In this document: positions 8,636-26,670 of the stretch, one piece after another
Numbering within the stretch: position 1 is the stretch's first letter
Layout of the letters: every line of letters starts with the position of its first letter
NCBI GenBank assembly: GCA_030390025.1
Contig: CM059430.1
Coordinates: forward strand, 57,536,001 to 57,600,000
Direction: 5' to 3'
From: Squalus acanthias
Taxonomy: Eukaryota
DNA: 64,000 nt
The notes under the pieces: generated by a model
Database searches by the model: none
What the model was told of the DNA's origin: nothing
Seen by the model: only the letters and a program-made list of their open reading frames with translations
Translations under genes and position numbers: made by a program

Positions 8636-8899
8636 AGGGGTGTGTTGGGGTGGGGGCGGTCAGCTCTCCCGCTGGGGAGCTGTTGTCTTTGTTTGGGGAG
8701 CTGGCCATGGAGCCAGAACACAGAGTAAAACATCAAACTCCTCGACTCAAATCCCGAAATGTGGGCAGAAGGGCGATGAGATGTCTTTATTTTTTTTGTG
8801 GATGGTTGGGACTTTTCTGAAGCAGGTCATGGAGGTGGTGGTGGGTCGGCCAGACACAGAGCGCCGGGACTGGGACACTGGGGACCTGCTCCTTCAGCT

Positions 8900-9434: not shown

Positions 9435-9489
9435 ATGTCCTCCAGAACCACACTGCAGTCGCTGCTGATCCTGGCACTGGTCTCCGCAG
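9435..9489 (+). CDS. VJ-C1 Ig-superfamily receptor, exon 1 (signal peptide MSSRTTLQSLLILALVSA)
   Basis: ATG in ggcATG context, hydrophobic leader, phase-1 donor CAG|gtgggt, in frame with the V exon. Confidence 0.8.
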
Positions 9490-9699
9490 GTGGGTCACCC
9501 CCCTCTCACCACAATGGAAAACTTAACCCTTTCAATAATCAGCTATTATTAACGAATCTTAGTTGGTTTAGTTTGCCTCTTGCTTCGTTCCTTTCCTCCT
9601 CCCCTTTACAGGTTCCTCCTGTCTCCTGTGTCTGTCATTCTCTCTCCGTGGTGCCCCGATCATTTGATGTAAAGGGTTTCGAGACGTCCTGGGGTGAAA

Positions 9700-10000
9700 G
9701 GCGCAATATAAATCTCCAACCTTTGCCAGCTCTGATGAAAGGTCAAGCGAATAGTATCGACTCATTTAAGGGGAGGCTAGACAAGCATGTGAGGGAGAAG
9801 GGAATAGAGGGTTCTGCTGAGAGAGTTAGACAGGAAGATGGGAGGAGGCTCGAGTGGAGCATAAATGGGGCATGGACTGGTTGGGCCGAATGGCCGGTTT
9901 CTGTGCCGTATATCCGATGTAATCCTTGTGACCTGAAACGGTAACTCTTTCTCTCTGCATAGTTGCTGCCTGACCTGCTGAGTTTTTCCAGCATCTTGTG
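9700..10000 (+). mobile_element. Penelope pLTR remnant (family B) split by a CR1 3' fragment (~9746-9929)
   Basis: ctgatgaaaggtca | CR1 tail | gacctgaaacggtaactct...gctgcctgacctgctgagtttttccagc matches the reverse complement of the pLTRs at 26671 and 29446. Confidence 0.75.
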
Positions 10001-10042
10001 GGTTTTTTTTTAATATCAATGTAAATCTTTCTTTCCCTGCAG

Positions 10043-10360
10043 TTACCGGGAATCCCGTGCTGCGTGTGGGGCAGTTCCCCGTCAGCCTGAACCAGACCAA
10101 AGGTAGCAATGTGAGCTTGTATTGCACCTTCCCGTTTGCCCAGGATAAAGCAAGTGTCCGAGTGCACTGGTGGAGGGAGGGCGAGCCCAGATTCCTGAAG
10201 GCAAAACGTGACAGCAGGTATCAATTTGAAATTGTCAATAAAGTCAGCGCCGCCTTTCACCTCCTGAATGTGGGCACCTCGGACTCGGGCCTTTATTACT
10301 GCCGAGTGAACAACGCGGGCCAAGTGGGGAATGGGACCGGCTCAAGGCTCCTGGTAACCG
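10043..10360 (+). CDS. VJ-C1 receptor exon 2: single-exon V-set domain with germline J-like G strand (NKp30/antigen-receptor-like)
   Basis: ttccctgcag acceptor, G|gtgagt donor, phase 1-1; SLYCTF, VHWWRE, DSGLYYC, then GNGTGSRLLVT (diglycine GxG...LxV J motif); no RSS seen. Confidence 0.92.
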
Positions 10361-11081
10361 GTGAGTGTCATATTTAATCCTCTGGCTGAAGATGTCCCGT
10401 GTAGCTGCAGCTCGCCCCGTCACTGGAGGCTGGTCCTGAACCGTTCTCGCCGACTTTACAAGTTAGTGAGAGGGAGATGAATAGAGCCGCGACAAGGCTC
10501 TAAACTTACACTGGAATCACTGGCCGGCGCTGGCACCGGCTCGCTCGGGATGTCCCGAACTGCCCAGGCGTGGTGTGTGTCCGGGAGGGAGTCCAGACCC
10601 ACAGAGCCAGTGAGGCCAAACTGAGACATGAGATCCACGGATTTCTGTCATTGAGACTGGGATCAATAAGTATTAGTGTGAGATTAAAGAGGGGGAAGTT
10701 ACAGACTGTTATAACTCAGCTATTCCACAGTCCGTTACTCTGTAAATTGTCCTTCTCTTGGGCTGCAAAGGTCTCTACAAAAGGAGATGTTTAACTACCC
10801 GCGGCGTCCTTCTGCAGTAAAACAAGAAACCCTGGATTTTATCGAAATATGTGTGTCCGGCCCGAGCTCCCGATGCAGTGCCAGCGCCCCGGAGCTGAAG
10901 GATTTCTGTGTGGGCAGACACCTGATGGCGAGTCGCTGTCCATTAAATCCCCGGCCTCCGGCCCCGGCCCCGCACCTGCAGCTCCCGCTAAAACCCCACG
11001 GCGGAGACTGGACTTTCTGTTTACTTCAGGGTGGAATCTGGCCCCTTTTAACCCAGGTGAACTATCCCGTGTAATGTGCAA

Positions 11082-11451
11082 TCATAGAATCATAGAAATT
11101 TACAGCACAGAAGGAGGCCATTTCGGCCCATGGTGTCGCGTGCCGGCCCACGAGGAGCTATCCAGCCTAATCCCACTTCCCAGCTCTTGGTCCATAGCCT
11201 TGTAGGTTACAGCACTTCAAGTGCATATCCAAGTACTTTTTAAATGTGATGAGGGTTTCTGCCTCTACCTCCCTTTCAGACAGTGAGTTCCAGACCCCCA
11301 CCGCCCTCTGGGTGAAAACATTTCTCCTTAAATCCCCTCTAAACCTCCTACCAATGACTTTAAATCTATGCCCCCTGGTTGTTGACCCTCTGCTAAGGGA
11401 AATAGGTCCTTCCTCTCCACTCTATCTAGGCCCCTCATAATTTTATACACC
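11082..11451 (-). mobile_element. CR1 LINE 3' fragment
   Basis: Closely similar to 1662-2020 (atcatagaa tail, cagtgagttccagacc, aaatctatgccccctgg). Confidence 0.85.
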
Positions 11452-12195
11452 CCAGTCCTCCCCAAATTCAATTCTTACCGACTTTCTCCGATAAATTCAC
11501 CGATTTTTAAATATTGCCGGTCGGTTTTTAATTATTTTAATCCAAGTAATAAGGGATTTCCCAGCCCCCCAATTCTCTGCTTTGTATTTGTGTTCCACCC
11601 GGACACCCGCGGTGTGTCTGATGTGATATTCCCATCCCTCTCCGGCTCTCCAAAAATACAAGCAAACCTCTAATCAATACAAATCCCGACTGAAAGTATT
11701 CCCACAACTCATACAATCAGCAAAAGAGAAGTGAATAAATCTGCAAGTGTTTGTTGAGAATTTTTTTTAAGCTAGTGGGATATTATGGTATGATATGGTA
11801 TGTATTAACATTCTCCTATCAATTATTTAACCGATGGATTACCTGGTTTATTTTATGCTATAAAATGCTGTAATTGACGGTTTTATCAGGTTAACCGGTC
11901 TGTAATATTTCATCAACACTTGGCACATTTACATCAAATTCCTCTATTGGTTATTTTAACGGAGATGTTAACTTGTTTTTTTTTACACTGCGAATGAGGT
12001 TTTGCCCGCTTTTCGCTCCCATAATCTGACTAAAGTGTTGCTCCTAATTTTGAACTGGATTTAATGTCCATATAATCGGAAACATTCCCAGAATATTAAA
12101 TAAAATAATTTTGAAACGAAGATCTGTCTCAGCAAATACAGGGAGAAGTGATCCGGGTCTCATTGAATGGAGGGGCCCAACCTTTCCCTACGAAG

Positions 12196-12281
12196 GGAGT
12201 TGGCAGCAGTCAGTCTCAGCCGGAGTTGGCAGCAGTCAGTCTCAGCCGGAGTTGGCAGCAGTCAGTCTCAGCCGGAGTTGG
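12196..12281. repeat. 26-bp tandem repeat, ~3.3 copies (GGAGTTGGCAGCAGTCAGTCTCAGCC)
   Basis: Identical units visible directly. Confidence 0.9.
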
Positions 12282-13139
12282 GGAAATCTGGTGTTCAGCA
12301 TGAGCTAGAATGCGCGCCACCTCCCAGCGGGAAGAGAGTTCATCTTCAGATACTTCAACCATGCTGACTGGTATAAGGGCCGAGGCTGTGAATCCAGCTC
12401 TCATGTGTCTGTTTATCTGGGCACTTTGAGCCGCTTTCTTCATTTCTCGGACCGCTACCCACCACACAAGAAGACGCTTTTTCTGCCTCCGTTTCTCTCG
12501 GGATTTCTTGCCTCACCTCAATGTGTGATTTTAGGAGAGGAGGAAGGTCTGTGCGGTAGCTGGATGTTAAACCGTGAAACAAAGCAGGATATATTACTCG
12601 CTCGGCTTGTCTTTTACCGTTTACAGGAAGACCAGAAACTCGTCAGTTTTATGATGCTTTGAAATTGCTCATGACCTTTTCGATTTTGATGTAAGATTTC
12701 ATCAGCAAACAAAATTACTTTTAAGTGGCCATCCTGAGTTCTGAGTCTTGTGCGCTTTAGAGAGAACGGTCACTGAGGGTTTGAAATCCAACTCTGCAGC
12801 AATAGTAAGCAAAGGGTTTATTGGTAAAATAGCGAACAGATTGGTGAATAATACCGGAGTGCACGGTTTCAACTGTTGGGTCGCTGGTACCAACCTATTT
12901 GTAAAATGTATTTAACCTACTAACTTTATCCCATGTAACAAACGCATTAGAGCATTCGGGGTTTTGAAATTATTATGGGTTACCAGTGTACTCGGATTCT
13001 CTCATTCCTTCAGCTATTTTAGCAACATTAACTTGCATTTTGTCGCGCTCCCCACATGCAGAGAGACGTCTCAACGCTCTTTCCAGGACACTGGGCAAAG
13101 AGTAGACTGTGAGCAGGGGGTGGGGGGAGGAGAGAAAAA

Positions 13140-14410
13140 GAGGAGGCTTTTGAAGGCAGGGCATGAGTTGTAAAAAAGGTTGTAGGTGCCGGAGAGAGTG
13201 TTCCAGGGGAATGAAAGGGTGACCAGTGATGGGGCATCGGACAACAGGGAGCAGGCCGGAGTTGGGCCATTGGTGGTGGTGGTGGGGGGGGGGGGGGGGT
13301 GCTTGTAGGAACGTACGGTCGGCTGGGCATCACCGAAATGGGATGGGGGAGGCAATTGAGGGATTTGAAGGCAAGGATGAGGATTTGAAAGTCAATTGGC
13401 TGGAGTATGGGGAGTCAATGGACCTGGGCAGGGACAGGGTGGTGGGTGTGAGGGTGGGGACCCAGGGTGGTGGGTGTGAGGGTGGGGACCCAGGGTGGTG
13501 GGTGTGTGAGGGTGGGGACCCAGGGTGGTGGGTGTGAGGGTGGGGACCCAGGGTGGTGGGTGTGAGGGTGGGGACCCAGGGTGGTGGGTGTGAGGGTGGG
13601 GACCCAGGCTGCCGTGCTTTGGACGGATTTTAGTTCATTGGAGAAATTGAGCCTCGGGGTAGTAACGTTAACGAGGCTCGGGCAGCAGAGAGGGAGAGGC
13701 TCGGGCAGCAGAGAGGGAGAGGCTCGGGCAGAGGCGTGCAGAGTTAGAGCTGTCATGGTCTTACTCGGATGTTGGGTTAAATACTGAGCTTGGAATTGAG
13801 CAGTACACCAAGGCTCCACATTTCTTGGCTTGAGCCGACGAGGCCGCTGGGCAGGTTGGTGGTGTGCAGGGGTTCATAAGAACTGAAGATGAATTATTTA
13901 GTTTGACTGACATCTAGCTGGAGGTCCATATCTTAAGATCAGAAAGGCGGCTGGAGAGGTGGTGACGGCTTTGGGATCAAGGGAGGAGGGATAGCATATA
14001 AATGAAGGTAAAGGTACCAAGCATCGAGTACAGGGATAAGCAGAAGTGACTGTGCAGTCATGCGAAAAGAAGCGGCTGGTGACAATATAATCTCAATGAA
14101 GTGACAAGTAGGATTAGGACCCTGTGAGAGCAATGCCATGGATATACACAGTGGGAGAGAGCGGTTAGAGGATGGTGGGGTCAACAGTGTTGGAGGCAAT
14201 GGAGAGGTTGGGGGAGAGCCAGCCGTGGTCTGTTACATACAACTTTATTCCTTACTTCGCCCAGCATGGTTTGATGCTGTAGGAGCCTCAGTGGAAGGTC
14301 TCGGGCAGGGAATGGGAGGAGAGATGGGAGTGTAATTGTTTGGCAACAATGCGGCTCAGGTGAGGGAAGGAAAGTTCGAGATGGGTGCTATGTTGCAGAG
14401 AATGGAAGGG
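13140..14410 (-). mobile_element. Old degenerate L2-like LINE fragment
   Basis: Minus strand LSIASNTVDPTIL resembles the L2 RT motif LSAAFDTVDH; similar to the L2 copies at 49846 and 59330. Boundaries approximate. Confidence 0.55.
13435..13608. repeat. ~28-bp G-rich minisatellite (CAGGGTGGTGGGTGTGAGGGTGGGGACC), G-quadruplex-prone
   Basis: About 6 tandem units, each with four G runs of 3 or more. Confidence 0.9.
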
Positions 14411-14806
14411 TCAAGAAAGATATGAACTCGTTGACTTTAGTTGATTTCACCTGACAAAGGAGCAGCGCTCCGAAAGCTTGTGATTTCAAATAAAGCTGTT
14501 GGACTATAACCTGGTGTTGTCCGACTTCTCACATTTGTCCATCCCAGTCCAACACCGGCATCTCCACATCATCGTTGACTTTAAGCAGTGGGAAGCCTGC
14601 CGAAATAGTAAAGGAAGGCATTTCAGATGAGCAATTCTTTCACTCGGATCCCACAGTGTGATTTCCAGATTGGTTCACTGCTGTCGGCGCTGCGCCTGTT
14701 CCTCTGACAGAGGAATGGGAATGTCTACTTGTCACTTCATTGAGATTATATTGTCACCAGCCGCTTCTTTTCGCATGTCTGCACAGTCACTTCTGCTTCT
14801 CCCTGT
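14030..14806. repeat. 82-bp inverted repeat (arms 14030-14111 and 14725-14806)
   Basis: Arms are reverse complements with 2 mismatches. Confidence 0.9.
14440..14571 (+). mobile_element. 132-bp Penelope-derived mini-element (hammerhead + pLTR tail, family A)
   Basis: 12-bp TSD TCGTTGACTTTA (14428-14439, 14572-14583); tcac-CTGACAA-aggagcagcgctcc-GAAA-gcttgtga; tail nearly identical to 6500-6555. Confidence 0.8.
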
Positions 14807-15959
14807 TACCGGCGCCACATCCGTTCCTCGGGATCCTGCTCTGCCAGTCAGCGTGCTCTGCCTCAACAACCCATCGAATCTGAGTAAAACAGGAAACCAA
14901 TTCCAACAATTGAGCTATTAACCATTTATTAGGCCCACTACATTGGAGCACATTTTAAAGTAAACCACACAATGTGTACCCACAGACAGGAAGGACCTGG
15001 TGCCAGTGTTCAACAACACCGAACGAAATAATAGAGCCTGAAAGAGCAGTGTAAAAAAATAAACATAGAAACAGCGACATTACTATACCCATATTATTCA
15101 GAGTTAAATATCCTTCCCGGCCCTTCACTCTGAGCCGGTTTGATGGGTCAGTCCGGCAGCTCCGTCTGTGTCTCAGGAAAGGGAAGGGCGGCGGCTGAGG
15201 ACGGGATGAGGTGTTGCTTCCCGTCTCTGCTGGACCCGGGCGTCCGGCCAAGAGCTGGCCATCATCAATATAGTGACCAATATTATTCCATGGACTTATA
15301 ACAAGTCTGGGCACTCGGTGTGAGATTGATGTGAGACTGGAATTAGTGAATTAACCCGAGTAATTCTCAATGGATCGGCATTTATTCAGGATATATCGAT
15401 CATATCGATGTGTGTAGTTTAACTCGATCAAAAATATAACACACACATTAAGCGGCTTGTTGTACATTTCACCGGTGCTAGATATAACGAATTGGGTAAA
15501 AACTCACGTATAAAACAATACCGACAAATACCGCGTATGAACTCTGCAGAATAAGAGGCGCCTGTTGATTTTACTCTGGGCAGTGTTGGGATTCTCAGAC
15601 TTGTGAAACAATGACTGATCCCAGCAGAGCTAGGAATTTCCCCTGTCCGAGTTTCCAAACAAGCGGGTAGAATTTCAGAGGGGTTCTTTCGGCGGAAACC
15701 CGGGAGAAACGGCTCTGACTTTGCACTCCTGTGCATACCCCTTCACAAGTAAACCCCGGTATTACAATGCGAACTAGGGTCGGGAGAAAATGACTAAACA
15801 TTACAAGGCTGGAGAAAACAGTTGAACAAGATCAAGGTAAATTGAATGAATACGACAATGTCAAATAAAATCGAGAAAATTATTAAACCCGGAATTGAAT
15901 AAAAACGGATTCATTTTCACTTAAAACCGATATAAACCTTTCTCTCGTCTGTCCCAAAG

Positions 15960-16265
15960 CTTCTCTCGATCCGCCGCAGATTGTCCCCACCCTGTTTGGA
16001 AAAGAGTCATCGTTTTTCCTCAGGCTTGCCTGTAACACTGGCGGCTTTCACTCCAGGGAGCTGAGCATCAAGTGGTTTGTGAACGGCAACGAAATTGGAA
16101 CGGAGATCCGCAATGATATTCAGCCACGGCCAGGAGGCCTCTTCGAAGTTTCCAGCTATTTGGAGGCAGTGCCGCCTGTTCAGAATGGGACAGTTTACAC
16201 CTGCCGGGTCTCCTACCTGGACAGCCAGGTTCAAACCCTTTACACCTACATTTCCAGTGCTGAAG
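15960..16265 (+). CDS. VJ-C1 receptor exon 3: C1-set Ig domain
   Basis: Acceptor gtcccaaag, donor G|gtacag, phase 1-1, open; ASLDPPQIV...LACNTGGFHSRELSIKWFVNG...GLFEVSSYL...VYTCRVSY matches the C1-set pattern (Cxx.GF, W, F...S.L, YxCxV). Confidence 0.88.
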
Positions 16266-17212
16266 GTACAGTCATGTTCACAGATTCTCAAACGTTGCTC
16301 TAAACTTGTAAATTTAGTCTGGTGTGACATTGAATTTAGATCAAGTTGGCATTTTCTGAAAGACAATTTAAGAAACGCCGGGTGGGAATATCTCCTGGGT
16401 TCCCACGCTTTTGCCGGTGGTACCGGAGCGGGAATGTTCAGATCCATGCTGGGTATTTAAATGAAGCGAAGCGAAATCGAAGGTGATATGTTGGGCCATT
16501 CCCGCCTCAGTAACACTGGACAAGACTGACACCAGCGTTCAACCGGCGTCCAGCCTGACTAGTTGACGAGAGACGTGGAGGGAAGGTTAAATGGTTATGG
16601 CAGTAACTTGAGTAAAGAGGTACCTTCCACCTGGAATGCACTGCCTGAAAGGGTGGTGAAATAGTAATTTTCAAAAGGGAATTGGATATATTTTGAAAAA
16701 GAAAAAAAAATCCAGGGCTGTGGGGAAAGAGCCAGCGCAGGCACGATGGGCCGAATGGCCTCCTCCTGTGCTGTATGATTCTATAATGTCCCCTACCAGT
16801 GGCATGTCCCTCTCTACTTGGAAGCAGCAACTGGAAAACTTCTGAGATAGTGCCTTGAAGCATTAGAATCCTGCAGCAACAACCATTTCCCACCCACCCC
16901 ACACTGGGGAGAACTCCTAGGGCAGGAGCCCATTAAAGGTATCGAAATGAGACTGACCCGTCAAAATTCCCAAGGGTTAGTTCAGCGGGCAGTCGCACTC
17001 CCAGCGCCAATGCCGGTGGAGAAGAAAATGAAGATACAACCTGTGCATTGTATCATAACAAAAAGGATCACAGTCCTAACAGTCACCTTAATTCAAAGTC
17101 ACTTGGGTGGCACTGGCCTTCATCTTAAAGGTGCATGGTTTTCATAAGAAAGTGTTAAGCACACCTGTTTTTATTGGAGGGTGAAGACCCAAAAGCATAG
17201 TTTTTGCTGCGA

Positions 17213-18145
17213 TAATCCAAGTTTGCTGATGATACAAAGCTAAGTGCGACAGTCAGCTGTGAGGAGAACACAAAGAGTCTGCAAACGAATATAGATAGAC
17301 TAAGTGGGTGGGCAGTAAGGTGGCAGATGGAGTATAATGTAGGGAAATGTGAGGTTATTCACTTTGGTAGGAAGAATAGAAAAACAGAATATTTTTTAAA
17401 TGGTGAGAAACTTTCAAATGTTGGTGTTCAGAGAGATTTGGGTGTCCTCGTGCAAGAAACACAGAAAGCTAGCATGCAGGTACAGCAAGCAATAAGGAAG
17501 GCAAATGGCATGTTGGCCTTTATTGCAAGGGTGTTGGAGTATAAGAGTAAGCAAGTCTTGCTACAATTGTACAGGGCCTTGGTGAGACCACACCTGGAGT
17601 ACTGTACACAGTTCTGGTCTCCTTATCTAAGGAAGGATATACTTGCCTTGGAGGCAGTGCAACGAAGGTTCACTAGATTGATTCCTGGGATGAGAGGGCT
17701 GTCCTATGATGAGAGATTGTGTAGAATGGGCCTATACTCTCTAGAGTCTAGAAGAATGAGAGGTGATCTCATTGAAACATACAAGATTCTGAAGGGGATT
17801 GACAGGGTAAATGCTGAGAGGTTGTTTCCCTTGGCTGGAGTGTCTAGAACTGGGGGCATAGACTCAGGATAAAGGTTCGGCCATTTAAGACTGAGATGAG
17901 GAGGAATTTCCTCACTCAGAGAGTTGGGAATCTTTGGAATTCTCTGCCCCAGAGGGCTGTGAATGCTGAGTCTTTGAGTATATTCAAGGCTGAGATAGAT
18001 AGATTTTTGGACTCATGGGGAATCAAGGGATATGGAGATCGGGCGGGAAAGTGGAGTGGAGGTCGATGATCAGCCATGATCTTATTGAATGGTGGAGCAG
18101 GCTCGAGGAGCCGTATGGCCCACTCCTGCTTCTTATGTTCTTATA
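17213..18145 (+). mobile_element. CR1 LINE 3' fragment (RT C-terminus)
   Basis: KFADDTK, WQMEYNVGKCEVIHFG, LVRPHLEYC, 3' cttatgtt tail. Confidence 0.9.
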
Positions 18146-18777
18146 ATGTGATCTGGAATTGACAGAGTCACGTACTTCAATGTGGTTTGTGTTGCTGCTT
18201 CAGGTCAACAAATCAATATTTTACCAAATGCCTTCTCATGGAACCTCTTTAAGGAAGCAATATTTTTACAATTCATAAAACTCCTGTCAATGTGTATCAG
18301 AAATTGAAGTAGAATCTGCTCAATTTTAAATGATATTGACAAATTTGAGTAGCAGCAGTGAGAGTATGTGCAGGTCTGTACCGGAGAGGGACCAACAATA
18401 ATGGTGAGATTCTCCAGTCCATGAGTGGGAGGGGGTGCAGGTCTGTCACAGAGAAGGGCAGGTTTTTGCAGTGAATGAGGGCACTGCTGGAATAGGAGAG
18501 GATGGAGAAGGTAAATTAAAACATTTCTCCTCTACCCATTGCCCCATTATCTTCCTGACTTAATTTTACAAACATACATATATATTTTTTAAACCGGTAT
18601 TATTTGCAACCACCATGTTTACTAACCAGGATGTGGTATTGTCAGATTAAATCACATTGTTACTTTGTGTATCAGGTATCAGTGTTTAAATTAAGTGCTA
18701 AAACATACATGTGTTGTATTGTTCCCACATTTCCTGTGGTGTGATATAAGTTGAGTTATGTATTTGTAACGTTGCAG

Positions 18778-18891
18778 AGAGAGAATCAGATGTTCTGCCC
18801 TGGTGGATCTATATCTGTATAGGCTGTGGAGCTTTCCTCCTGCTGCTCCTGATTATTACACCAATACTTTGTAAATTCTGTGGATGCAGAG
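18778..18891 (+). CDS. VJ-C1 receptor exon 4: transmembrane exon (ERESDVLPWWIYICIGCGAFLLLLLIITPILCKFCGCR)
   Basis: gttgcag acceptor, G|gtaagc donor, phase 1-1; ~23-residue hydrophobic helix with no charged residue. Confidence 0.85.
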
Positions 18892-19618
18892 GTAAGCATG
18901 CTGTATTATGCTAAATGGTTTAAATTAAGAATTTTCAATATACTTTATAAAAACACAAGTTACAATGAACTGAAGTGATAATGCAAGTGAAATATACTTG
19001 TCTGAAGTAACTGTACTCATGGATTTAAACAATTAAGTTCAGTGAACACTTAGGAGGGCATCGTAATAATGGGAAAGTTGATATTCTTCTGTGGTGAATA
19101 ATTTACTATACATCACTAGACAACCTCTTCAGTTGTTGGTTTGACATGTGAATGGAGTAAATGTTGTAATATCTCAGGTATTGCAAGAGAGGCAAAAGAC
19201 TGGATCACTGCCACAGACATTTACACCATGTATTGCAACGACTATCCTAATATTACAGTTTCCTCACTACAGCACTGCAGCCTAGCTCTGTCCCGTTACT
19301 GGTAGATGTGATGGAGAAGAGTGGTATATATGAATAATGCAAGGAGGGGTACACTGTGTTGTTCTGGGATCCTGGAGTTCCCTTGCAACTCTACAGATAA
19401 GATTGTGGTAACTCTCCATTATCCCAGCAGTGTTTAAGTCATGTTAGATTTTCTAAAGGGCAGTTTAAAAGCTGCACTTTATCAATAGCATCAAAAGTCA
19501 AACAGTAACCTTATTTTCCATCCAAGGTAGGTAGGCTGCACCAGGTTAAATGTCCACCAGCCCCACTATATCTAAAGACTATATTAGCTCATAACCTAGT
19601 TAAGGGATACTATCCTCC

Positions 19619-20254
19619 TAGATATTGGGGATCACTCTCGCCTCGTCTCACGATCTAGATATTGGGGATCACTCTTGCCTCCCCTCACCTCCTAGATATT
19701 GGGGATCACTCTCACATCCCCTCACGATCTAGATATTGGGGATCACTCTCACCTCCCCTCACGATCAAGGTATTGGGGATCACTCTCACCTCTCCTCACG
19801 ATCTAGATATTGGGGATCACTCTCACATCCCCTCACGATCTAGATATTGGGGATCACTCTCACCTCCCCTCACGATCTAGATATTGGGGATCACTCTCAC
19901 CTCCCCTCACGATCTAGATATTGGGGATCACTCTCACCTCCCCTCACGATCTAGATATTGGGGATCACTCTCACATCCCCTCACGATCTAGATATTGGGG
20001 ATCACTCTCACATCCCCTCACGATCTAGATATTGAGGATCACTCTCACCTCCCCTCACGATCTAGATATTGGGGATCATTCTCACCTCCCCTCATGATCT
20101 AGATATTGGGGATCACTCTCACCTCCCCTCACGATCTAGATATTGGGGATCACTCTCACCTCCCCTCATGATCTAGATATTGGGGATCACTCTCACCTCC
20201 CCTCATGATCTAGATATTGGGGATCACTCTCACCTCCCCTCACGATCTAGATAT
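19619..20254. repeat. 37-bp minisatellite, ~17 copies (TAGATATTGGGGATCACTCTCACCTCCCCTCACGATC)
   Basis: Highly homogeneous tandem units in intron 4. Confidence 0.95.
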
Positions 20255-20788
20255 GAGATCAACTAGTTATGTTGAAGCTAATTTGATAGGTAAACAATCA
20301 AAGCAAGTTAATGAATAACTAAATCTAGTTAGACTAATTTATAATCGAAACCAGTTGCATTGACCAATAGCTGTGACTGACTATAGTAATTATTATGAGA
20401 CTCATTTAATTGCCAACTGATATTAGTCAAATTGTTCTGAATTGACCTGTAGATTTGGTTTCTGAGTAAGCAGGTGATGAGAAATGATTGGCAGTGAGAA
20501 ATTCTGGTTATATTTATGTCTCTAGTATGCATCGGGTTGGCAAATTAAAATATTTTATTTGCTCAAATAAGTCATTAGGATCTATTAAATGATATCAAAC
20601 ATATGGCAGTGTCATTTACATTCATAATAATAGGGTTCTATTAGATTGCAAAATTGAGATATTTCCATTAATTGGTGTAGGTCAAATGTAATGATACACT
20701 GAAAGGCAATTTGCTGCTCTACCTATTCCTATCTGCCAGAGAATGTGTTTAAGGTCATGTTATTTACTATCAATTTATTCTGTACCAG

Positions 20789-20832
20789 GCAAAGGGAGAA
20801 AAGCAAATGAAAGAAGTGTTCAGGAAAAGCAG
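20789..20832 (+). CDS. VJ-C1 receptor exon 5: short cytoplasmic exon (GKGRKANERSVQEKQ)
   Basis: ttattctgtaccag acceptor, CAG|gtaagt donor; phase 1 to 0 links the TM exon and terminal exon in frame. Confidence 0.7.
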
Positions 20833-21669
20833 GTAAGTTGACTATAATCCTTTTTATCAGCTGCTCTGGAATTTGTTTAAAATTAGTTTTGTACAGAATA
20901 AAATGTCCTAAACATGGAGAACGAAAAAGAGAATTGAGATTAAGCAGCAACTTCATCTTTCTGTGTACATTCCGCCCTGGATCACGGACGTGGTTTGAAT
21001 TTAATACATAGAAATTGTTGTGCTCCCTCTGTTGTCTTGAAGGATTGTCTAATGACTTTTTTAAAATGCTCTCCCGCTCAGGCCTCTGACTAAAATTGCA
21101 GTTAGGTCCCGATCGTGTCATCAGGACCCGACCTGTACATTTAAAGCGGGTTCCCACTACCTTCCTGTGCGTGTCCTGCTCAAAAGAGCATCGGAACCCG
21201 GTGGGCAGGCAGTGGGACCGCAGGGGGTAAATCGCTGCCCCTGTTGTAACTGCCTTCCTGCCTCATTTCCGCCCTTTGGAGGTGGGGGAGAGGGAGTTAA
21301 GGAAGGTAAGTCGCAGGGGGAGGGGAGGCGGGGGTGGTGTCACGATCGCAGAGGGTGGGGGTCCCGGGTGGCAGCGGCCCAGGTTATTTTTTGTGGGCCC
21401 TGGAGGTGGACTCCCGCTCTTCCACGGGCCACAAACATAATTCGACTTCCCTTTGCTGGGCCTCTTCTCTTCCGTCGCCCCTTTTAAAATGGTGCCGACC
21501 GCATCGCTGGTGTTAATGGGCCGGTAAGGCTACCAACCCTATTTGAGGCCGTTACTGCCCCGTTAACGCAAGGCAAAGGCAGTCACAATCAACCCCATTG
21601 TCTCTGGGGATTTTGATGTTGTCTAAAAGTCAATATCTTGTCAATCTCTTTTATACTATTATCTTGCAG

Positions 21670-21921
21670 CATTTGCAGAGACCAGCTAATTACAAGATGG
21701 CATATACTGTTAATGATTTCACCAGCCTCACGAAAGAGACTAAGCCCCAGCACGTGGACAAGAGACCAGCATGCCCCCACATGCCACCGAGAAACCAGCA
21801 GAGAGATGGCAAGCTGGTTTATGCAACACCACAATTCAAACAGCGCCAGGGCAGAAACCAGTTACCTGAACCCAAGAACAACAAATCAGTTACTAGCAAG
21901 AAGTTTGTTCTCCAACCTTAG
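21670..21921 (+). CDS. VJ-C1 receptor exon 6: cytoplasmic tail with Tyr motifs (MAYTVN, LVYATP), stop TAG
   Basis: Phase-0 acceptor atcttgcag (alternative in-frame acceptor at 21679); joined CDS is 1089 nt = 362 aa + stop. Confidence 0.68.
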   Translation, partial: HLQRPANYKMAYTVNDFTSLTKETKPQHVDKRPACPHMPPRNQQRDGKLVYATPQFKQRQGRNQLPEPKNNKSVTSKKFVLQP

Positions 21922-23814
21922 CTGGTCCTGAATTAACATTTCAAAATCTATGCTGACAGCACTTTTTAAATGGTTCATCCAATCTCTTCAGGATATATTT
22001 TCTTACTCTGTCCCCTCATGAATGTGCTAAGTAACAAGCTTTGTGTTATGAATATGACAAATAATATGATGGCAACTTATGCTAATGACAATAGCTTCAT
22101 TAGTGTTAGGCAGCAACTGTCTACCCATAGCACTCTGCAAATCTCTTTTAATACTGTAAAGGAACACTGGCAAAGTGTGGGGCCAACATGAATGAAAAGT
22201 CCTAGAAACTGAAATTGGATTGGTATTAAATTACAAGAAAAATGTCCATCCCCAGCACCAACATCCTTACCTTGAAAAGCACAAAATTCACCAGAAAACA
22301 GAGCTTGCACTGCACACCCACAGGATCATTTTACAATTTTGCTTTATTCGCTTGCGTGGTCCTGTGTGCAGGACTGGTAGCAAATGTTGCTGAGGAATTA
22401 AAATCCGCGGTCCGAAAAATAAGGTGGGTGGACAGGGATGAGAGTTTTCAGCTAATAAAAAGAAACAACTGTTATTGACGTAGAAAGGCATTTTGTGCAG
22501 AGCCAGCGGACAAGATTATAAAATAAATAAAGTTATCAGCTAAATTTAACGAGCAACCTCTTAACACAGAGAACGCAGACCAGGGCATGGAATGAGAAAG
22601 TGCCATTCAGATCAATCCTTTTACAGACCATGTACAATTTTCACTATGATGGATTTAATCTCCTGGTAGAAATGAACAGCTGAGGCCAGAACCTAGCCGA
22701 GCAAAACATCCCATAAATGAATTTAAAAAAAACATCAGATCAATTGAGCACTTTAATTTAAACTACTCCAGTCTGGCTGCATTCCACTGAAACCCTGATT
22801 ATCATTATCACAGAAACATAGGAATGTTAGCAGTGTTTGATATAAGTCCATAGTTAACCAGATATTTATTTGGCTCTTCATAGAATCATACAGCATTGAA
22901 GGAGGCCATTCAGGCCATCATGCCTGTGCCAGCCCTTTGAAGGAGCTGTACAATTAGTTTCAGTCCTTTTAGTCTTTTTTTAATAAAGCAGCTAATTGTA
23001 GTGTTAATTGCTTCTGATGGGAATCCATACCACAGATTAACTTTGTATGCAAAAAATGAGAATATATTAACCTCTTTCAAGCCTTGTTAATTTTGGACTC
23101 AACCTCTAATTCTTCAAAATTAAAATTAAATAATTTGCTTACAGCTCAAGTTTTAAAGATGTTGATCACGTCCTCTCTAACTATTTTTCTCCACTGATTT
23201 CTAGTTCCTCTTCATAACTAGAATGTTAAGGCCCCAAATCACTCTCGTTCTTCTCAGAACAATCTCCAATGCACCAATGTTTTTTTTGAGGCCAGAGTGT
23301 TTTAAACTGTACACATTACCCCAACATCTGCCCTTACCAAAAACCCCTTTCAACGAACGATCAGTGAGTTTATTCTGCAGAACTCAATTGCTCTCTGCCT
23401 CCAGACAGAGCTTTCTCCATTCATTACCCTCTCCTGCTTTCTCCTGCCAAGCCAGTACACCTAACACATGTGCCATTCATTTCAAGAACATTAGTCTTCC
23501 TTAAAAGCTTCACAAATGGAACTGGATAAAGTCACTAGCTTATGACTTGGTTCATGCCTCGAATCGTTAGACAGCTCCCATTGATGCTCATGTATCCTGA
23601 GGGTGTGCACCACCAGCTAATTGCATGTACTGTAATTGTAGATGATGTTCGATGCTGAGGGGGAGATAGCAATCTTGCTTAATGGTGCAACCACAACCTA
23701 CGTGCATTGGTGGTGGGGGGGGCACCATCCCTGCAGACAGTAATGGAGCCTACTGTACAAGTATGATTGACTTTATGGTCATGGTACTGGTTTGGGGGTT
23801 TAATGTTTTAAAAG

Positions 23815-23894
23815 AGAAACTGGTTTATGCCACAATAGCAATTCCCAGCCAGTTGGAACAGAAGTTGCAACAGTGCCTAGAAAAAAGAAAATAA
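23815..23894 (+). CDS. Candidate alternative terminal exon with canonical ITIM (EKLVYATIAIPSQLEQKLQQCLEKRK*)
   Basis: aaactggtttatgccaca is paralogous to aagctggtttatgcaaca in exon 6; weak acceptor ttttaaaag; AATAAA overlapping the stop and again at ~24065. Confidence 0.4.
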
Positions 23895-26670
23895 ACCCAA
23901 TCATTTGGTGTTAACATTGAGATTATGGAAGGTTAATTTATCAGAGCTGAGAGATCAAAGTCTGTGGTTTTCGTGATGGTTCATTATGTCCTGTGCAACT
24001 CTAGAACGCAATGGGTAGATTTTATATGATGTATATCTCTGCACTGTAAACTCTTTGTCAGTAAAATAAAGGCTTATATTTCTGTAGCTGGAGTCACAGG
24101 GCACAATATCATTTCAGTTTAAGTCACATGGTAGACTCGATAGACACTCATGTATTAGATTCATTCACCTGCTTTTACACATAACCTTGCTTAAAACTTA
24201 AATTTTATTTCTATGATTGTTTGGAGGCTGTTGGTGTTCAGAAGATGTCTTAAAACGGTCAAGCTTCTCAAGTATTCACAGTAACTCCCATCTTATATGG
24301 TTCTCATTTAGAAATCAGTGAACAAATGGGCGGAAGAGCCTGTCTGCAGACAGCTGTATGGATAGTTTTCACACCCCGCATCAGGCTCTTACCTACAATC
24401 ATTCCTGTGGGAGGCAGTTAACCTCACCATCTCCTTTTTAAGCAGCATTGACAGTCGCAGACAACTTCTCTAATCGCATGTAACAGATTCACGTCACTGT
24501 GCACTTTGGTAAATCCAGATTGGAATTAACATGTGGTACTGATTCACGAGCCAGGTGAATAGTCTCAGTCAATACGTTGCTCCGTGCATGTTCCAAACTC
24601 TTGGCAAGTTCAGCACTCGCCAATTGTGCTGAGTAGTCCAGAGCTTTGCATGCTGCACCCTCTGGCTTGTATGGTATCAACCAGAGTGCAGAATCATGCC
24701 ATTAACTACCACGGTCACCTATTCTAATCCTGGATCCTGTGTCTTGGTGAGCTGCAGTGTGTCCATTTGATATCTGCATCAGATACGCCCTTCTCCAAAA
24801 TGCTGCTGGGGCCCTTTGAGCAATGAGAAACCATGTTTAATACTGGATTTTGGATGTGTGAATTGTCCATGTTTTTACAATGAGACTCGTGCAAAAGACA
24901 AGTGCCAATCGTTAGTGTTCTGCGGGCACAGGTATTGGAGTAGGACTTCACTAAATGTTCACTCACATATTGGGGCAGGCTTTGTGATGATTGCTATGCT
25001 AATATGTATTTCTACTGAATACAGGCAACGGACAGGTAGGTCACTTACCAGATCCAATGGCAGCCTCACGTGTGGAGCTGCAGTTGGTTATAACCTGATC
25101 ATGCAAGATATTTCCGAGGTGCGCTTCACTCCTGTTCAGTTAGTTGAGGTTTCCGACAGTGCTCCATTTTAGCTCTTGCAGCCCTTTTCAGGCCATTGTT
25201 TGCAATAGTCTTCTGCAGTTCTTGTCATTGTTCTAAATTCATCACATTTTTCATACATAGCTGGAAAACTAGCGAAAGGTGACCATCACTTCAAAAAAAG
25301 CCAAAAGCTCCAAAAATACTGATAGCTGAAAAATAGTTCTGAAATAGAGGCCTATGATATGTGAAGACAAGAAGTTAGACCGAGAGTGCAATGGGACACA
25401 AACTCGTCTAAACATAAGCTGTAAATATACAAAACATTGCATCACTTTATTGCAGTGCACACAAACACAGTTAGCAGCAATTGCAATTTGGAGCCTGCTG
25501 TAATTCTGAGTGAATCTATCTAATCTTTTAATTGAAGTAAAAATTCATCAGCACTCCAACCCCACGCCTCATTTTATTTCCAAGCCATAGCAATTGCACA
25601 AGTACAGCGACAGGAACTGTCAAATAAAACCCGTCAAGATATTCACACCAGTGAACACCCACCTTAACTCAAAAAAGCAGCTGCGTTGAGGAAAATAAAC
25701 CTTCACCAAAGACAAGAGTCAGCCATGTCCCAGAGATGTGCTTTGAGGAAAATAAAAAAGCTTTAAAAGTTCGTTTTAATTTGGTCATTTTTCTTTTTTC
25801 CAAAAATTCCAATTATACAGAGTTCAAATTGAGCAATTTCACTAAAACAGCATAATGTGTTTTGTGCATGATTTTAATCTGAGTTAATAGGTCATTTGAA
25901 TTAAGCAACTTGGAATTAAGAAGAATAATACTGCACATGGGGGGCAAGCACTAACATATCCCATAACTGTGACTCTTAGAAACCATCAGCTCCTTTTATA
26001 TTTTTCTGCCTCCAGTTTGTGCTCAATAAACAACCGGAGAAAGTAACATCTTTCAATGTTGGCCGCCAGTCAATCTGGTTCTGACCGGCTCTCGTTGCTC
26101 CTTCCAAATTATGGTTGGAAATCTGGCTGATCAGCCGAGTGGGAGGTTGAAGCTGCAGTCATTCCAAATGTTGGCATTCCACCACGCTTCTCTTTCTAAC
26201 CCGTGCTGTTTCTTATACATGTCATTACTGCTCTTCACCAAATGAAACCTCCTTCTCTGAGTTTGCACACTGTCTGCACACACAAGTGATGTTTCAGCTC
26301 TATTAGTGCAGAGCGCCACCCAGTGGCTAAGATAACAGCGGAAGGGACAGGGAAGCTGCTCTGCCTCAATCGTCTCACCCAGCAGTGTGAAGGAGGTGCA
26401 CGAACCCTGTACAGTCATTTACTCACGAGTCTTCATCAATCCTTTCATTTCAAGCGTGAATGAACCCGCTAAACCTCGCTCATTGGAAGCGGCTGAAAAG
26501 CATACTTTAATCTGCGTCAAATTGCAAAACTGTACATTGCTGCATGTTTAAACAGGTTTGCGATCTGTCTCACTCTCTTCAGTGGAGCCGTTGAGAGCCG
26601 GCAAGCAGTGAGTGCGGGAGACTATGCGGACACCCCACTCCCCCCGTAAACCGAACATCAACTGATTCTG

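What the first reader, a model, noticed from the sequence alone, without database searches (positions are those of the whole stretch)
9435..21921. Non-rearranging antigen-receptor-like VJ-C1 receptor with uncharged TM and Tyr-motif tail
Seen: six phase-compatible exons give a 362-aa type I membrane protein. Its V domain carries the J-type GxG..RLxV strand in the same exon, with no RSS, and is followed by a C1-set domain. Known: the C1 set is largely restricted to Ig, TCR, MHC, B2M, tapasin and SIRP; NKp30 has a joined VJ domain but no C1 and a charged TM. Inference: this looks like a pre-RAG TCR/IgL-like chain serving as an inhibitory or adaptor-independent innate receptor in a cartilaginous fish. 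It may belong to the little-studied germline VJ-C1 genes or be a new lineage.
Basis: partly seen in the sequence, partly recalled or inferred. Interest (0 to 1): 0.85.

Follow-up and report, generated by a model that had tools for sequence, protein, structure and literature searches.

The report
Shark germline VJ-C1 receptor gene
This is a real, expressed shark gene for a membrane receptor whose outer part looks like an antibody light chain but needs no gene rearrangement; it belongs to a large, unnamed receptor family found so far only in cartilaginous fishes.

Summary
Six phase-compatible exons (9435-21921, + strand) encode 362 aa: leader, V-set domain ending in a J-like strand within the same exon, one C1-set domain, an uncharged TM and a Tyr-bearing tail. 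Pfam calls V-set and C1-set above cut-off. Transcript contigs of 4 of 4 runs join V to C1 exactly at 10360|15960. All coding exons from V onward are collinear with predicted proteins of eight other elasmobranch species.

It is not a new lineage. It is the one-per-species orthologue of uncharacterised NCBI models with inconsistent automatic names (SIRP-alpha-like, SIRP-gamma-like, TCR-beta-like). It sits in a large VJ-C1-TM family; 24 of 24 members I looked up come from cartilaginous fishes. Paralogues mostly carry canonical ITIMs. This lineage carries none (0 of 8 orthologues, nor the window gene). It keeps MAYTAxDF and xIYATPQ motifs and a very conserved TM.

SIRP, NKp30 and UrIg membership each fail on architecture. 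"Pre-RAG" ancestry and an inhibitory role remain untested. Other first readers of this scan noted paralogue clusters elsewhere in this genome; I did not check them.

The parts
9435..9489 (+). Exon 1: start codon and most of the signal peptide (18 codons + 1 nt; split leader, phase 1)
   Evidence: ATG at 9435 and donor GT at 9490. Hydrophobic leader MSSRTTLQSLLILALVSA. Contigs X3 and X4 run 349 and 450 nt beyond 10290 towards the 5' end. That fits 247 nt of V exon plus an exon 1 of at least 102-203 nt (arithmetic only). The leader is weakly conserved (42% mean identity among orthologues), and no significant exon-1 hit was found.
10043..10360 (+). Exon 2: V-set domain with the J-like G strand in the same exon (germline-joined VJ)
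   Evidence: Pfam V-set 37.6 bits, E 2.8e-9. 69% identical to residues 20-124 of P0001. It sits in a starred orthologue clade in the V tree (96/89). Splice to 15960 seen in 4 of 4 runs.
10327..10359 (+). J-like strand GNGTGSRLLVT (GxG[T/S]xLxV register = GTGSRLLV), with an N-glycosylation sequon NGT
   Evidence: Translation. NGT sequon at V-exon residue 96. RNA contigs cover 10290-10359 with 0 other letters apart from a synonymous C>T at 10359 in X2 and X4, so there is no junctional diversity. No RSS heptamer in 9900-10600.
15960..16265 (+). Exon 3: C1-set domain
   Evidence: Pfam C1-set 39.1 bits against C2-set_2 12.4 bits. Best PDB matches are MR1/MHC class I alpha3, SIRP gamma/alpha d2, MHC II beta2 and beta2-microglobulin. 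Cys-13 residues-Trp spacing. 76% identical to P0001 residues 128-226. Contig pieces span 15959/15960-16265 exactly. 100/100 orthologue clade.
18778..18891 (+). Exon 4: short stalk, uncharged TM helix and Cys-rich juxtamembrane stretch (ERESDVLPWWIYICIGCGAFLLLLLIITPILCKFCGCR)
   Evidence: Acceptor ttgcag| and donor |gtaagc. 81-87% identical to orthologues, the best-conserved part (stalk+TM 74% mean pairwise identity against 60-62% for the Ig domains). AF2 helix 235-263 in the orthologue. No read evidence for its junctions.
20789..20832 (+). Exon 5: 44-nt basic cytoplasmic mini-exon (GKGRKANERSVQEKQ), phase 1 to 0
   Evidence: Acceptor ccag| and donor CAG|gtaagt. 79% identical to P0001 residues 266-279. 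No read evidence.
21670..21921 (+). Exon 6 coding part: cytoplasmic tail with two conserved Tyr motifs (KMAYTVNDF at 21694-21720; KLVYATPQF at 21811-21837) and stop TAG 21919-21921
   Evidence: Acceptor tcttgcag|. 72% identical to Heterodontus P0163 over 85 residues, down to the C-terminus. Motifs conserved in alignment A1.
21922..24090 (+). Probable 3'UTR of the same terminal exon, ending after AATAAA at 24065-24070 (inferred)
   Evidence: Contigs extend 2157-2596 nt 3' of 16265. After subtracting 158 nt for exons 4-5, the longest reaches about 24107. That is just past the AATAAA at 24065.

Best explanation
The locus is an intact, transcribed gene for a type I membrane receptor. It consists of a split leader, a germline-joined VJ-type V domain, one C1-set domain, an uncharged and strongly conserved TM, and a tail of about 100 aa with two conserved tyrosines.

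It is the window species' orthologue of a gene present once per genome in elasmobranchs, with a sister sequence in Callorhinchus. It belongs to a large multigene family of non-rearranging VJ-C1-TM receptors seen so far only in cartilaginous fishes. NCBI names the family's models inconsistently (SIRP-alpha/beta/gamma-like, NCR3LG1-like, tapasin-related-like, Ig lambda-like, TCR-beta-like).

Shown: the gene structure, V-to-C1 splicing, the domain types, orthology and the family's spread.

Inferred: the V domain binds a fixed (germline-encoded) ligand through its CDR-like loops. The C1 domain and the small-residue TM motif (IGCGAF; IGSGAF in most orthologues) mediate cis-association. The juxtamembrane cysteines are lipidated. 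Ligand engagement leads to phosphorylation of the two tail tyrosines, which then recruit SH2 proteins.

This lineage has lost, or never had, the canonical ITIMs that most long-tailed paralogues carry. Its second motif is an invariant YA[T/S]P. Its signalling is therefore probably regulatory, but not a simple SHP-1/2 ITIM switch.
For: Structure and domains: and Pfam. PDB sequence matches are C1-set only for exon 3.

Splicing: the joint 10360|15960 with GT..AG ends appears in 4 of 4 runs from 2 studies, and the C1 piece ends at 16265.

Orthology:
- P0001 (Heptranchias, 347 aa) is 76% identical on C1 and has the same layout.
- 13 hits at E<=1e-3 among 1362 candidates, all elasmobranch, with one close hit per species at 49-65%.
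- Exon-by-exon BLASTP is collinear.
- Starred orthologue clades in the V tree (96/89 and 96/90) and the C1 tree (100/100; Callorhinchus P0009 sister at 96/98).

Family:
- A family V-domain HMM scores 88.9-151.2 bits on 54 domains, against at most 21.5 bits on unrelated V domains in the same set.
- 24 of 24 looked-up representatives with that V domain are chondrichthyan.
- Orthologue and paralogues share one chromosome-scale contig in Heptranchias, Heterodontus, Chiloscyllium and Callorhinchus.

Tail and TM:
- Canonical ITIMs occur in 0 of 8 orthologues, against 20 of 24 paralogue rows with tails of 60 aa or more.
- Motifs conserved in alignment A1.
- Stalk+TM is 74% identical on average, against 60-62% for the Ig domains.

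Fold: AF2 model of P0001 with pLDDT about 77-94 across V and C1. 50 of 50 top Foldseek rows are antibody Fab entries and all are VIA rows at Z 14.1-14.7.
Against: - No reads were laid on the junctions C1-TM, TM-exon 5 or exon 5-exon 6, nor on exon 1. These rest on homology and splice signals.
- The orthologous proteins are themselves automatic gene models.
- The tissue and cell type of expression are unknown. The runs are coded, and their 'RNA' status is a guess confirmed only by the spliced joint.
- Every functional step (ligand binding, dimerisation, phosphorylation, SH2 recruitment) is inference.
- The window protein's first motif has Asn at +3, and the skate orthologue lacks that Tyr. The first Tyr may therefore be dispensable.
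- Restriction to cartilaginous fishes rests on the best 150 of 278 hits and on 30 look-ups.
- Key papers were not held and might already describe the family: Kinlein 2021 (NCR3 family), Ohta 2019, Flajnik 2012 and 2023, Fu 2019.
Confidence: 0.75

Rival explanations
1. It is a true chondrichthyan SIRP. The family descends from the same ancestor as SIRP alpha/beta of bony vertebrates, has lost one C1 domain, and works like SIRP: an inhibitory member signalling through SHP-1/2, paired with activating members.
For: - The best contiguous V-C1 match of the orthologue profile in the PDB is SIRP alpha (2wng_A, E 2.5e-16). SIRP gamma scores 2e-14.
- SIRP gamma and alpha are ranks 4-5 for the C1 exon alone.
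- NCBI's automatic names are most often 'tyrosine-protein phosphatase non-receptor type substrate 1-like'.
- The family has a paired-receptor look. Long ITIM tails occur in 20 of 24 paralogue rows, and other members have a TM Arg or Lys with a short tail.
- Callorhinchus paralogue tails alternate xTYAxL and xEYAxx motifs, which I recall as SIRP-alpha-like (recall, not tested).
- A skate member is V-C1-C1 (P0006).
Against: - The margin is negligible: a Fab light chain scores 2.5e-15 and UrIg2 2.6e-14 in the same search.
- No SIRP appears among the 60 PDB matches shown for the V exon.
- The SIRP matches to the C1 exon cover only residues 20-57.
- A search with a paralogue's tail alone found only Callorhinchus proteins: 2 hits among 726 candidates, no SIRP.
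- The two C1 domains of P0006 are near-identical sisters, a recent exon duplication and not SIRP d2/d3.
- The window lineage has one C1 and no canonical ITIM.
- Structural top hits are all light chains.
Confidence: 0.25
2. It derives secondarily from a germline-joined Ig light-chain (or TCR) gene that lost rearrangement and captured TM and cytoplasmic exons. On this reading it is post-RAG, not a relic of the pre-RAG receptor.
For: - Light chains are the best structural matches (50 of 50 rows).
- Light chains and TCR alpha are among the best single-domain V matches.
- Unchecked first-reader notes place paralogues inside Ig light-chain clusters of this genome.
- Germline-joined Ig genes exist in cartilaginous fishes (recalled; a germline-joined ratfish IgM V is listed in PMC12227049, passage).
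Against: - The family V domain is sharply distinct from the other V domains in the hit set (at least 88.9 bits against at most 21.5 bits).
- The J-like strand lacks the Phe/Trp before GxG.
- The lineage is shared by holocephalans and elasmobranchs, so it is very old.
- No shark IgL or TCR sequences could be put in my trees, so the idea is untested rather than refuted.
Confidence: 0.15
3. It is a shark NCR3 (NKp30) family member that carries an extra C1 domain.
For: - The V exon matches NKp30 structures (3noi_A, E 1.3e-4, 25.2 bits).
- It shares a GNGT sequon just before the RLxV strand. For NKp30 this is recalled.
- Shark NCR3 genes are said to be many and divergent (accessions for eight are listed in PMC12227049, passage).
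Against: - The NKp30 score is no better than those of light chains and TCR alpha (26-27 bits).
- NKp30 has a single Ig-like domain, a stalk and a TM that binds CD3 zeta (passage of PMC12272517). This gene has a C1 domain and an uncharged TM.
- None of the 30 looked-up names is NCR3-like.
- The Kinlein 2021 paper was not held, so shark NCR3 architecture could not be checked.
Confidence: 0.07
4. The six-exon model is an artefact: exons of separate genes or a pseudogene joined by eye.
For: Exon 1 has no significant homology hit. Three junctions were not seen in reads.
Against: - The V-C1 joint appears in 4 of 4 runs, on contigs of 2463-3231 nt that continue on both sides.
- The reading frame is intact.
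- All five exons 2-6 are collinear in nine orthologous protein models.
- tblastn finds no other family exon in the window.
Confidence: 0.03

Closest known systems
SIRP alpha / SIRP family (PTPNS1)
   Same: Non-rearranging V domain with a J-like last strand, followed by C1-set domain(s), a single TM and a Tyr-motif tail. The wider family has a paired inhibitory/activating look. It is marginally the best contiguous V-C1 PDB match. SIRP has been proposed as a relative of antigen-receptor precursors (PMC2785349, passages).
   Different: One C1 domain, not two. No canonical ITIM in this lineage. SIRP is absent from the 60 matches shown for the V exon. No tail homology was detectable. CD47 binding and synteny are untested.
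Ig light chain / TCR chain
   Same: V(J)-C1 two-domain ectodomain, split leader and phase-1 exons. Best structural matches (Foldseek E about 2e-14; VIA Z 14.1-14.7; rmsd about 10 Å over about 195-200 residues).
   Different: V and J lie in one germline exon with no RSS, and no junctional diversity is seen in RNA contigs. No Phe/Trp before GxG. No membrane-proximal interchain Cys in the stalk. It has its own TM without a charged residue and a long signalling tail.
UrIg / UrIg2 (elasmobranch non-rearranging Ig-like genes)
   Same: Single-exon VJ domain with a split leader, C1-type domains, found in cartilaginous fishes (PMC12227049, section 7 read). The UrIg2 structure 9dmx_A matches the orthologue profile at E 2.6e-14.
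   Different: Nurse shark UrIg2 has nine C domains and epaulette shark eleven; UrIg also has several C domains and is called an antibody. This gene has one C1, a TM and a Tyr tail. The match is no better than to light chains.
NKp30 (NCR3)
   Same: Germline VJ-type V domain. Comparable weak sequence match (E 1.3e-4).
   Different: NKp30 has no C domain and signals through a TM-associated CD3 zeta (PMC12272517 passage). This gene has a C1 domain, an uncharged TM and its own tail.
PRARP genes of chicken and other non-mammals (Fu et al. 2019)
   Same: [quoted passage not shown]
   Different: The paper was not held. Its domain layout is known to me only from recall, so no comparison was made.

Membership tests
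C1-set Ig domain | Pfam C1-set above gathering score and better than the C2/I-set models | tested here: met
   39.1 bits against a cut-off of 21. C2-set_2 scores 12.4 bits, and no I-set hit appears for exon 3. All 60 PDB matches shown are C1-bearing proteins: MHC, beta2-microglobulin, SIRP, Ig constant regions, CD1.
C1-set Ig domain | Exactly 13 residues between the B-strand Cys and the C-strand Trp (criterion from PMC2785349, passage) | tested here: met
   C-NTGGFHSRELSIK-W, 13 residues.
C1-set Ig domain | (F/Y)(F/Y/H)P at the BC loop and xVxH after the F-strand Cys (PMC2785349) | tested here: inconclusive
   The window has FHS (Pro replaced by Ser) and CRVSY (His replaced by Tyr). Heptranchias and Rhincodon orthologues keep CRVSH.
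Chondrichthyan VJ-C1-TM receptor family (unnamed; NCBI 'SIRP-alpha-like' and other names) | Family-type V domain with a GNGTGxxLxV end, followed by a C1 domain and a TM, in one protein | tested here: met
   The window V and C1 exons fall inside starred orthologue clades of the family trees. Exons are collinear with members. The V-C1 joint is seen in RNA contigs.
SIRP family | Ectodomain of one V-set and two C1-set domains (PMC12975943 passages) | tested here: not met
   There is only one C1 exon between V and TM. tblastn finds no further C1 in the window. Orthologues also have one.
SIRP family | SIRP alpha type: cytoplasmic ITIMs that recruit SHP-1/2. SIRP beta type: charged TM residue for DAP12 | tested here: not met
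   No [SIVL]xYxx[IVL] in the window tail or in 8 of 8 orthologues (consensus recalled). No charged residue in the hydrophobic TM core, IYICIGCGAFLLLLLIITPIL. SHP binding is not testable here.
SIRP family | Specific sequence relationship, orthology or synteny, and CD47 binding | tested here: inconclusive
   SIRP alpha E 2.5e-16 against a Fab light chain 2.5e-15. The tail search found no SIRP. CD47 binding is not testable.
NCR3 / NKp30 | Single VJ-type Ig domain plus stalk, no C domain; TM that pairs with CD3 zeta | tested here: not met
   A C1 exon is present and spliced to V. The TM is uncharged. The NKp30 description comes from a PMC12272517 passage.
NCR3 / NKp30 | MHC linkage and B7H6 as ligand | not testable with these tools
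   The window holds no MHC marker gene. Its only other non-TE ORF has an IBR domain.
UrIg / UrIg2 | VJ exon followed by several C1-type domains (nine in nurse shark UrIg2, eleven in epaulette shark) | tested here: not met
   One C1 exon only. UrIg/UrIg2 description from PMC12227049 section 7.
Rearranging antigen receptors (IgL, TCR) | Separate V and J segments flanked by RSS, with junctional diversity in transcripts | tested here: not met
   V and the J-like strand are contiguous in exon 2. No heptamer occurs in 9900-10600 and no RSS pattern in the window. Contigs from 4 runs equal the germline across 10290-10359, apart from one synonymous SNP.
ITIM-bearing inhibitory receptors | At least one [S/I/V/L]xYxx[I/V/L] in the cytoplasmic tail | tested here: not met
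   The window motifs are KMAYTVN and KLVYATP. 0 of 8 orthologues meet the pattern, against 20 of 24 long-tailed paralogue rows. Met at -2 with Ile/Leu/Val/Met at +3 in 6 of 8 orthologues is ITIM-like only.

The most novel reading that the evidence does not exclude
This conserved single-copy lineage and its family may be surviving relatives of the un-split V(J)-C1-TM chain from which Ig light chains and TCR chains arose. That would make it a TCR-chain-like receptor that was never invaded by the RAG transposon. It would sit closer in architecture to the ancestor than the multi-C-domain UrIg genes. It would still sit beside Ig light-chain clusters, if the other first readers' unchecked notes hold. 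Its conserved TM and YA[T/S]P tail would then show how the ancestral receptor signalled before CD3/CD79 adaptors.
Probability: 0.15. Interest if true: 0.9.

Novelty: new variant of a known kind. Interest (0 to 1): 0.55.

Why it matters
Single-exon VJ genes joined to C1 domains are what people look for when asking which gene the RAG transposon split to create antibodies and T cell receptors. PMC12227049 says such searches have been "of great interest" (passage).

This gene shows that sharks express a light-chain-shaped, germline-encoded V-C1 receptor with its own membrane anchor and signalling tail. Its lineage is shared by elasmobranchs and Callorhinchus. It belongs to a large family that public annotation scatters over at least nine unrelated names.

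Naming and mapping that family would give a concrete set of candidates to compare with UrIg, UrIg2, NKp30 and SIRP. It would also provide a new set of paired innate receptors to study in cartilaginous fishes.

The single gene in this window is an ordinary, intact member. The interest lies in the family and in this lineage's odd tail and TM.

Tried and rejected
- Word-indexed protein search with the V exon alone found nothing (2 candidates, none at E<=1e-3). This is uninformative because only proteins of 58-184 aa were candidates.
- Tail-only search with Callorhinchus paralogue P0026 (residues 268-406) returned only itself and P0041 among 726 candidates. No statistical link to SIRP tails was found. 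My impression of SIRP-like alternating motifs therefore stays a recollection.
- 'Duplicated KLVYAT motif as splice switch' (note s1-889527): blastn-short of 21670-21960 against the window found no second copy near 23.8 kb. Contig lengths fit one unspliced terminal exon ending after the AATAAA at 24065. I take the second motif for 3'UTR sequence, but I could not lay reads there.
- I looked for further family exons in the window by regex and tblastn. There are none.
- The IBR-domain ORF at 34.1-34.8 kb gave no useful PDB match, so it offers no synteny clue.
- Papers not held: PMC10530332 (UrIg 2023), PMC6761025 (Ohta 2019), PMC4594805, PMC8273117 (Kinlein 2021) and PMC3709836 (Flajnik 2012). For these I saw nothing beyond citations in other papers.
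- Literature searches that found no description of this family:
  - 'VJ-C1' + 'shark': 1 paper, about UrIg.
  - 'PRARP'/'nonrearranging'.
  - 'NCR3'+'shark'+'NKp30'.
  - 'SIRP'/'cartilaginous fish'/'C1-set'.
  - 'signal-regulatory protein'/'shark'/'ITIM'.
  - 'non-receptor type substrate 1'+'shark': 0 papers.
  - A poorly chosen five-term search whose 12 listed papers all had 0 occurrences of 'SIRP'.
- PMC12227049 has 0 occurrences of 'SIRP', 'ITIM' or 'inhibitory' in its main text.
- Supplements were closed and I did not ask for them. The locus maps and tables of PMC12227049 and PMC10751288 may list these genes.
- I did not build a tree with curated SIRP, NCR3, IgL, TCR or UrIg sequences. No tool handed me those sequences as stored proteins, and I would not type them from memory.

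Full report
THE GENE

On the + strand, six exons with AG/GT borders and phases 1-1-1-1-0 give an open frame of 362 codons:
- leader, 9435-9489
- V exon, 10043-10360
- C1 exon, 15960-16265
- TM exon, 18778-18891
- a 44-nt exon, 20789-20832
- a terminal exon whose coding part ends with TAG at 21919-21921

These were read. The window has no N. The introns hold LINE reverse-transcriptase debris and tandem arrays.

DOMAINS

- Searched exon by exon, exon 2 is V-set (37.6 bits, cut-off 26). Exon 3 is C1-set (39.1 bits, cut-off 21), while C2-set_2 reaches only 12.4 bits.
- Against PDB sequences the C1 exon matches MR1/MHC class I alpha3 (1.2e-8), SIRP gamma and alpha domain 2 (about 6e-8, over residues 20-57 only), MHC II beta2 and beta2-microglobulin.
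- The C1 exon has the 13-residue Cys-Trp spacing that Hatherley et al. give as a C1 hallmark (PMC2785349, passages). The FxP and xVxH motifs are each one residue off (FHS, RVSY).
- The V exon ends GNGTGSRLLVT. Read as GTGSRLLV, this fits the GxG(T/S)xLxV pattern of J segments.
- The best single-domain PDB matches of the V exon are antibody and TCR alpha V domains (2.6e-7 to 4e-5). Amphioxus IgVJ-C2 and NKp30 follow at 1.3e-4. No SIRP appears among the 60 shown.
- No RSS heptamer lies in 9900-10600, and no heptamer-spacer-nonamer occurs in the window.

TRANSCRIPTION AND SPLICING

One search found 12 runs holding parts of 10043-19000. None is on record as RNA. I laid X1-X4 (contigs, two studies) on 10290-16289.
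- All four have a contig that skips 10361-15959 with GT..AG ends. In X2 and X4 the contig carries C>T at 10359, which is synonymous.
- The pieces on the C1 exon end exactly at 16265. The contigs (2463-3231 nt) continue 2157-2596 nt further 3', and up to 349-450 nt further 5' of 10290.
- The V-to-C1 link, the central point of the finding, is therefore directly seen.
- The CDR3/J-like stretch equals the germline in all four runs.
- One 314-nt contig in X1 joins 12690 to 15960. This is a minor cryptic form.
- After subtracting exons 4 and 5 (158 nt), the longest contig would reach about 24,107. That is just past an AATAAA at 24065-24070. The terminal exon probably carries a 3'UTR of about 2.2 kb. 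This is arithmetic, not observation.

RELATIVES

- A full HMMER scan with the C1 exon gave 278 proteins at E<=1e-3. Only one scored below 1e-30: P0001, a 347-aa Heptranchias perlo model, 76% identical, with the same V-C1-TM-tail layout.
- With P0001 as query, 13 proteins passed E<=1e-3 among 1362 candidates, and all are elasmobranch. One close relative per species appeared in Cetorhinus, Heterodontus, Scyliorhinus torazame (two isoforms), Rhincodon, Hemiscyllium, Chiloscyllium and Leucoraja. More distant paralogues were also found.
- Each window exon from V to the last aligns to these proteins in the same order: V 48-69%, C1 56-76%, TM 63-87%, exon 5 50-79% (no hit to P0163, P0165 or P0169), tail 41-72% identity. 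Only exon 1 finds nothing significant.
- In maximum-likelihood trees the window V exon lies in a starred clade of 9 shark rows (96/89), which becomes 10 rows with the skate (96/90). Heptranchias is the nearest row.
- The C1 exon lies in a 100/100 clade of 10 elasmobranch rows, with Callorhinchus P0009 as sister (96/98).
- The gene is thus an old, one-per-genome lineage of cartilaginous fishes.

THE FAMILY

- An HMM of the family's V domain scores 88.9-151.2 bits on 54 domains of the fetched proteins. It scores at most 21.5 bits on the other V domains in the same set, with fragments in between.
- I looked up 30 representatives. All 24 that carry the family V domain come from cartilaginous fishes: sharks, rays, skates and Callorhinchus. 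The four bony-vertebrate entries are long multi-C1 Ig-like proteins.
- Source names vary widely: SIRP alpha-, beta- and gamma-like; NCR3 ligand 1-like; tapasin-related-like; Ig lambda-1 light chain-like; HLA class II DP/DO beta-like; M1-specific TCR beta-like; or 'uncharacterized'. Nobody has curated the family.
- Orthologue and paralogues share one chromosome-scale contig in four species.
- Other first readers of this scan noted clusters of 'VJ-C1-TM-ITIM' genes among Ig light-chain clusters elsewhere in this genome. I did not check these notes.
- This window holds only the one gene.

TAIL AND MEMBRANE ANCHOR

- Among paralogue rows with a tail of 60 aa or more, 20 of 24 have at least one canonical ITIM. 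The rows include near-identical cluster members.
- Several other paralogues have an Arg or Lys in the TM stretch and a short tail, which gives a paired-receptor look. The TM detection was a crude hydropathy window.
- The window's lineage differs. 0 of 8 orthologues, and not the window gene, have a canonical ITIM. All keep xIYA(T/S)P, with Pro at +3. Seven of eight keep M(A/V/T)YT(A/D)xD(F/S/A), and the skate lacks that Tyr. The window has Asn at +3 of the first motif.
- The stalk/TM/juxtamembrane stretch (LPWWIY...IGSGAF...LCKFCVCRG) is the best-conserved part: 74% mean pairwise identity, against 62% for V and 60% for C1.
- From general knowledge (recalled), small-residue TM motifs favour helix packing, juxtamembrane Cys clusters are often palmitoylated, and pYxxP suits SH2 domains of the Crk/Nck/Abl type rather than SHP-1/2.
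- I therefore read this as a germline-encoded receptor whose tyrosine signalling is regulatory but not a plain ITIM switch. I hold that part at about 40%.

FOLD

I did not fold the joined window model. AlphaFold2 on P0001 with 24 family sequences gave pLDDT of about 77-94 over both Ig domains, a TM helix at 235-263 and a disordered tail. Foldseek's 50 best PDB rows are all antibody Fab entries (E 2e-14 to 7e-14). The VIA second look shows 50 of 50 Fab entries at Z 14.1-14.7, rmsd about 10-12 Å, about 186-201 residues aligned. The large rmsd reflects the angle between domains.

COMPARISON WITH KNOWN SYSTEMS

- A profile of the nine orthologue-group sequences ranks SIRP alpha (2.5e-16) just ahead of a Fab light chain (2.5e-15), SIRP gamma (2e-14), UrIg2 (2.6e-14) and TCR beta/gamma chains (about 6e-12) among contiguous V-C1 matches. 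These gaps are too small to choose between them.
- SIRP membership fails on the two-C1 ectodomain and on ITIMs (features from PMC12975943 passages).
- NKp30 membership fails on the C1 domain and the TM (PMC12272517 passage).
- UrIg/UrIg2 membership fails on the number of C domains (PMC12227049 section 7).
- Rearranging receptors are excluded by the joined exon.
- The gene works like a SIRP/NITR-style germline receptor and looks like a light chain, but it is a member of none of these families.

LITERATURE

I found no description of this family in seven searches. The 2025 paper on UrIg2 does not mention SIRP, ITIM or inhibitory receptors in its main text. Five directly relevant papers were not held. 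Supplements were closed. An earlier naming therefore cannot be excluded.

VERDICT

The gene is an ordinary intact member of an under-described, apparently chondrichthyan-only VJ-C1-TM family. Within it, this lineage stands out by strict one-per-species conservation, a very conserved TM and non-ITIM Tyr motifs. Whether the family is a pre-RAG relic, a SIRP relative or a light-chain derivative is open.

Noticed in passing
window 23829-23891: An ORF stretch with a canonical ITIM-like KLVYATI (the subject of note s1-889527) lies about 1.9 kb past the stop codon. No DNA-level copy of the coding tail is detectable there. Contig lengths plus the AATAAA at 24065 suggest it is 3'UTR.
   Followed up: partly
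window 12690 -> 15960: One 314-nt contig in run X1 (depth 4.7) joins 12690 to the C1 acceptor with GT..AG ends. This is a minor cryptic upstream exon or splicing noise.
   Followed up: no
window 10359: A synonymous C>T (ACC to ACT, Thr) appears in the transcript contigs of runs X2 and X4 but not in X1 or X3.
   Followed up: no
window 11090-11489 and 14290-14689: Two intronic stretches collect summed contig depths of 10^4-10^5 in all four runs, with many loose ends. They look like members of abundant transcribed repeat families.
   Followed up: no
window 19618-20254: A 37-bp tandem array of 17.2 copies, 94% matches, sits in the intron between the TM exon and exon 5. Smaller arrays lie at 12196-12281 (26 bp) and 13435-13608 (28 bp).
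   Followed up: no
window 17216-17872: A LINE-type reverse-transcriptase tail (FADDTKL...) lies in the C1-TM intron on the sense strand. It has no Pfam hit. Similar debris occurs at 1663-2761, 3743-4246 (endonuclease-RT, 21.1 bits), 39184-40318, 44599-45114 and 62980-63405.
   Followed up: partly
window 29857-31515 (-) and 27065-27550 (-): A 552-aa ORF with weak RVT_1 (25.8 bits) and GIY-YIG (21.2 bits) matches, plus a second GIY-YIG fragment (23.3 bits). The pairing recalls Penelope-like retroelements; that name is recalled, not tested.
   Followed up: partly
window 34112-34798 (-): A Cys-rich ORF with an IBR (half-RING) domain (27 bits). It is the only other candidate host gene seen in the window. 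It has no useful PDB relative.
   Followed up: partly
window 8000-9400: A GC-rich stretch (0.60 in 8001-10000) lies just upstream of exon 1. This is compatible with a CpG-rich promoter.
   Followed up: no
fetched proteins P0025, P0098, P0107, P0114, P0134, P0135, P0171: These family paralogues have an Arg in the TM stretch and short tails, next to ITIM-bearing members. This suggests activating/inhibitory pairs within the family (the TM call was crude).
   Followed up: partly
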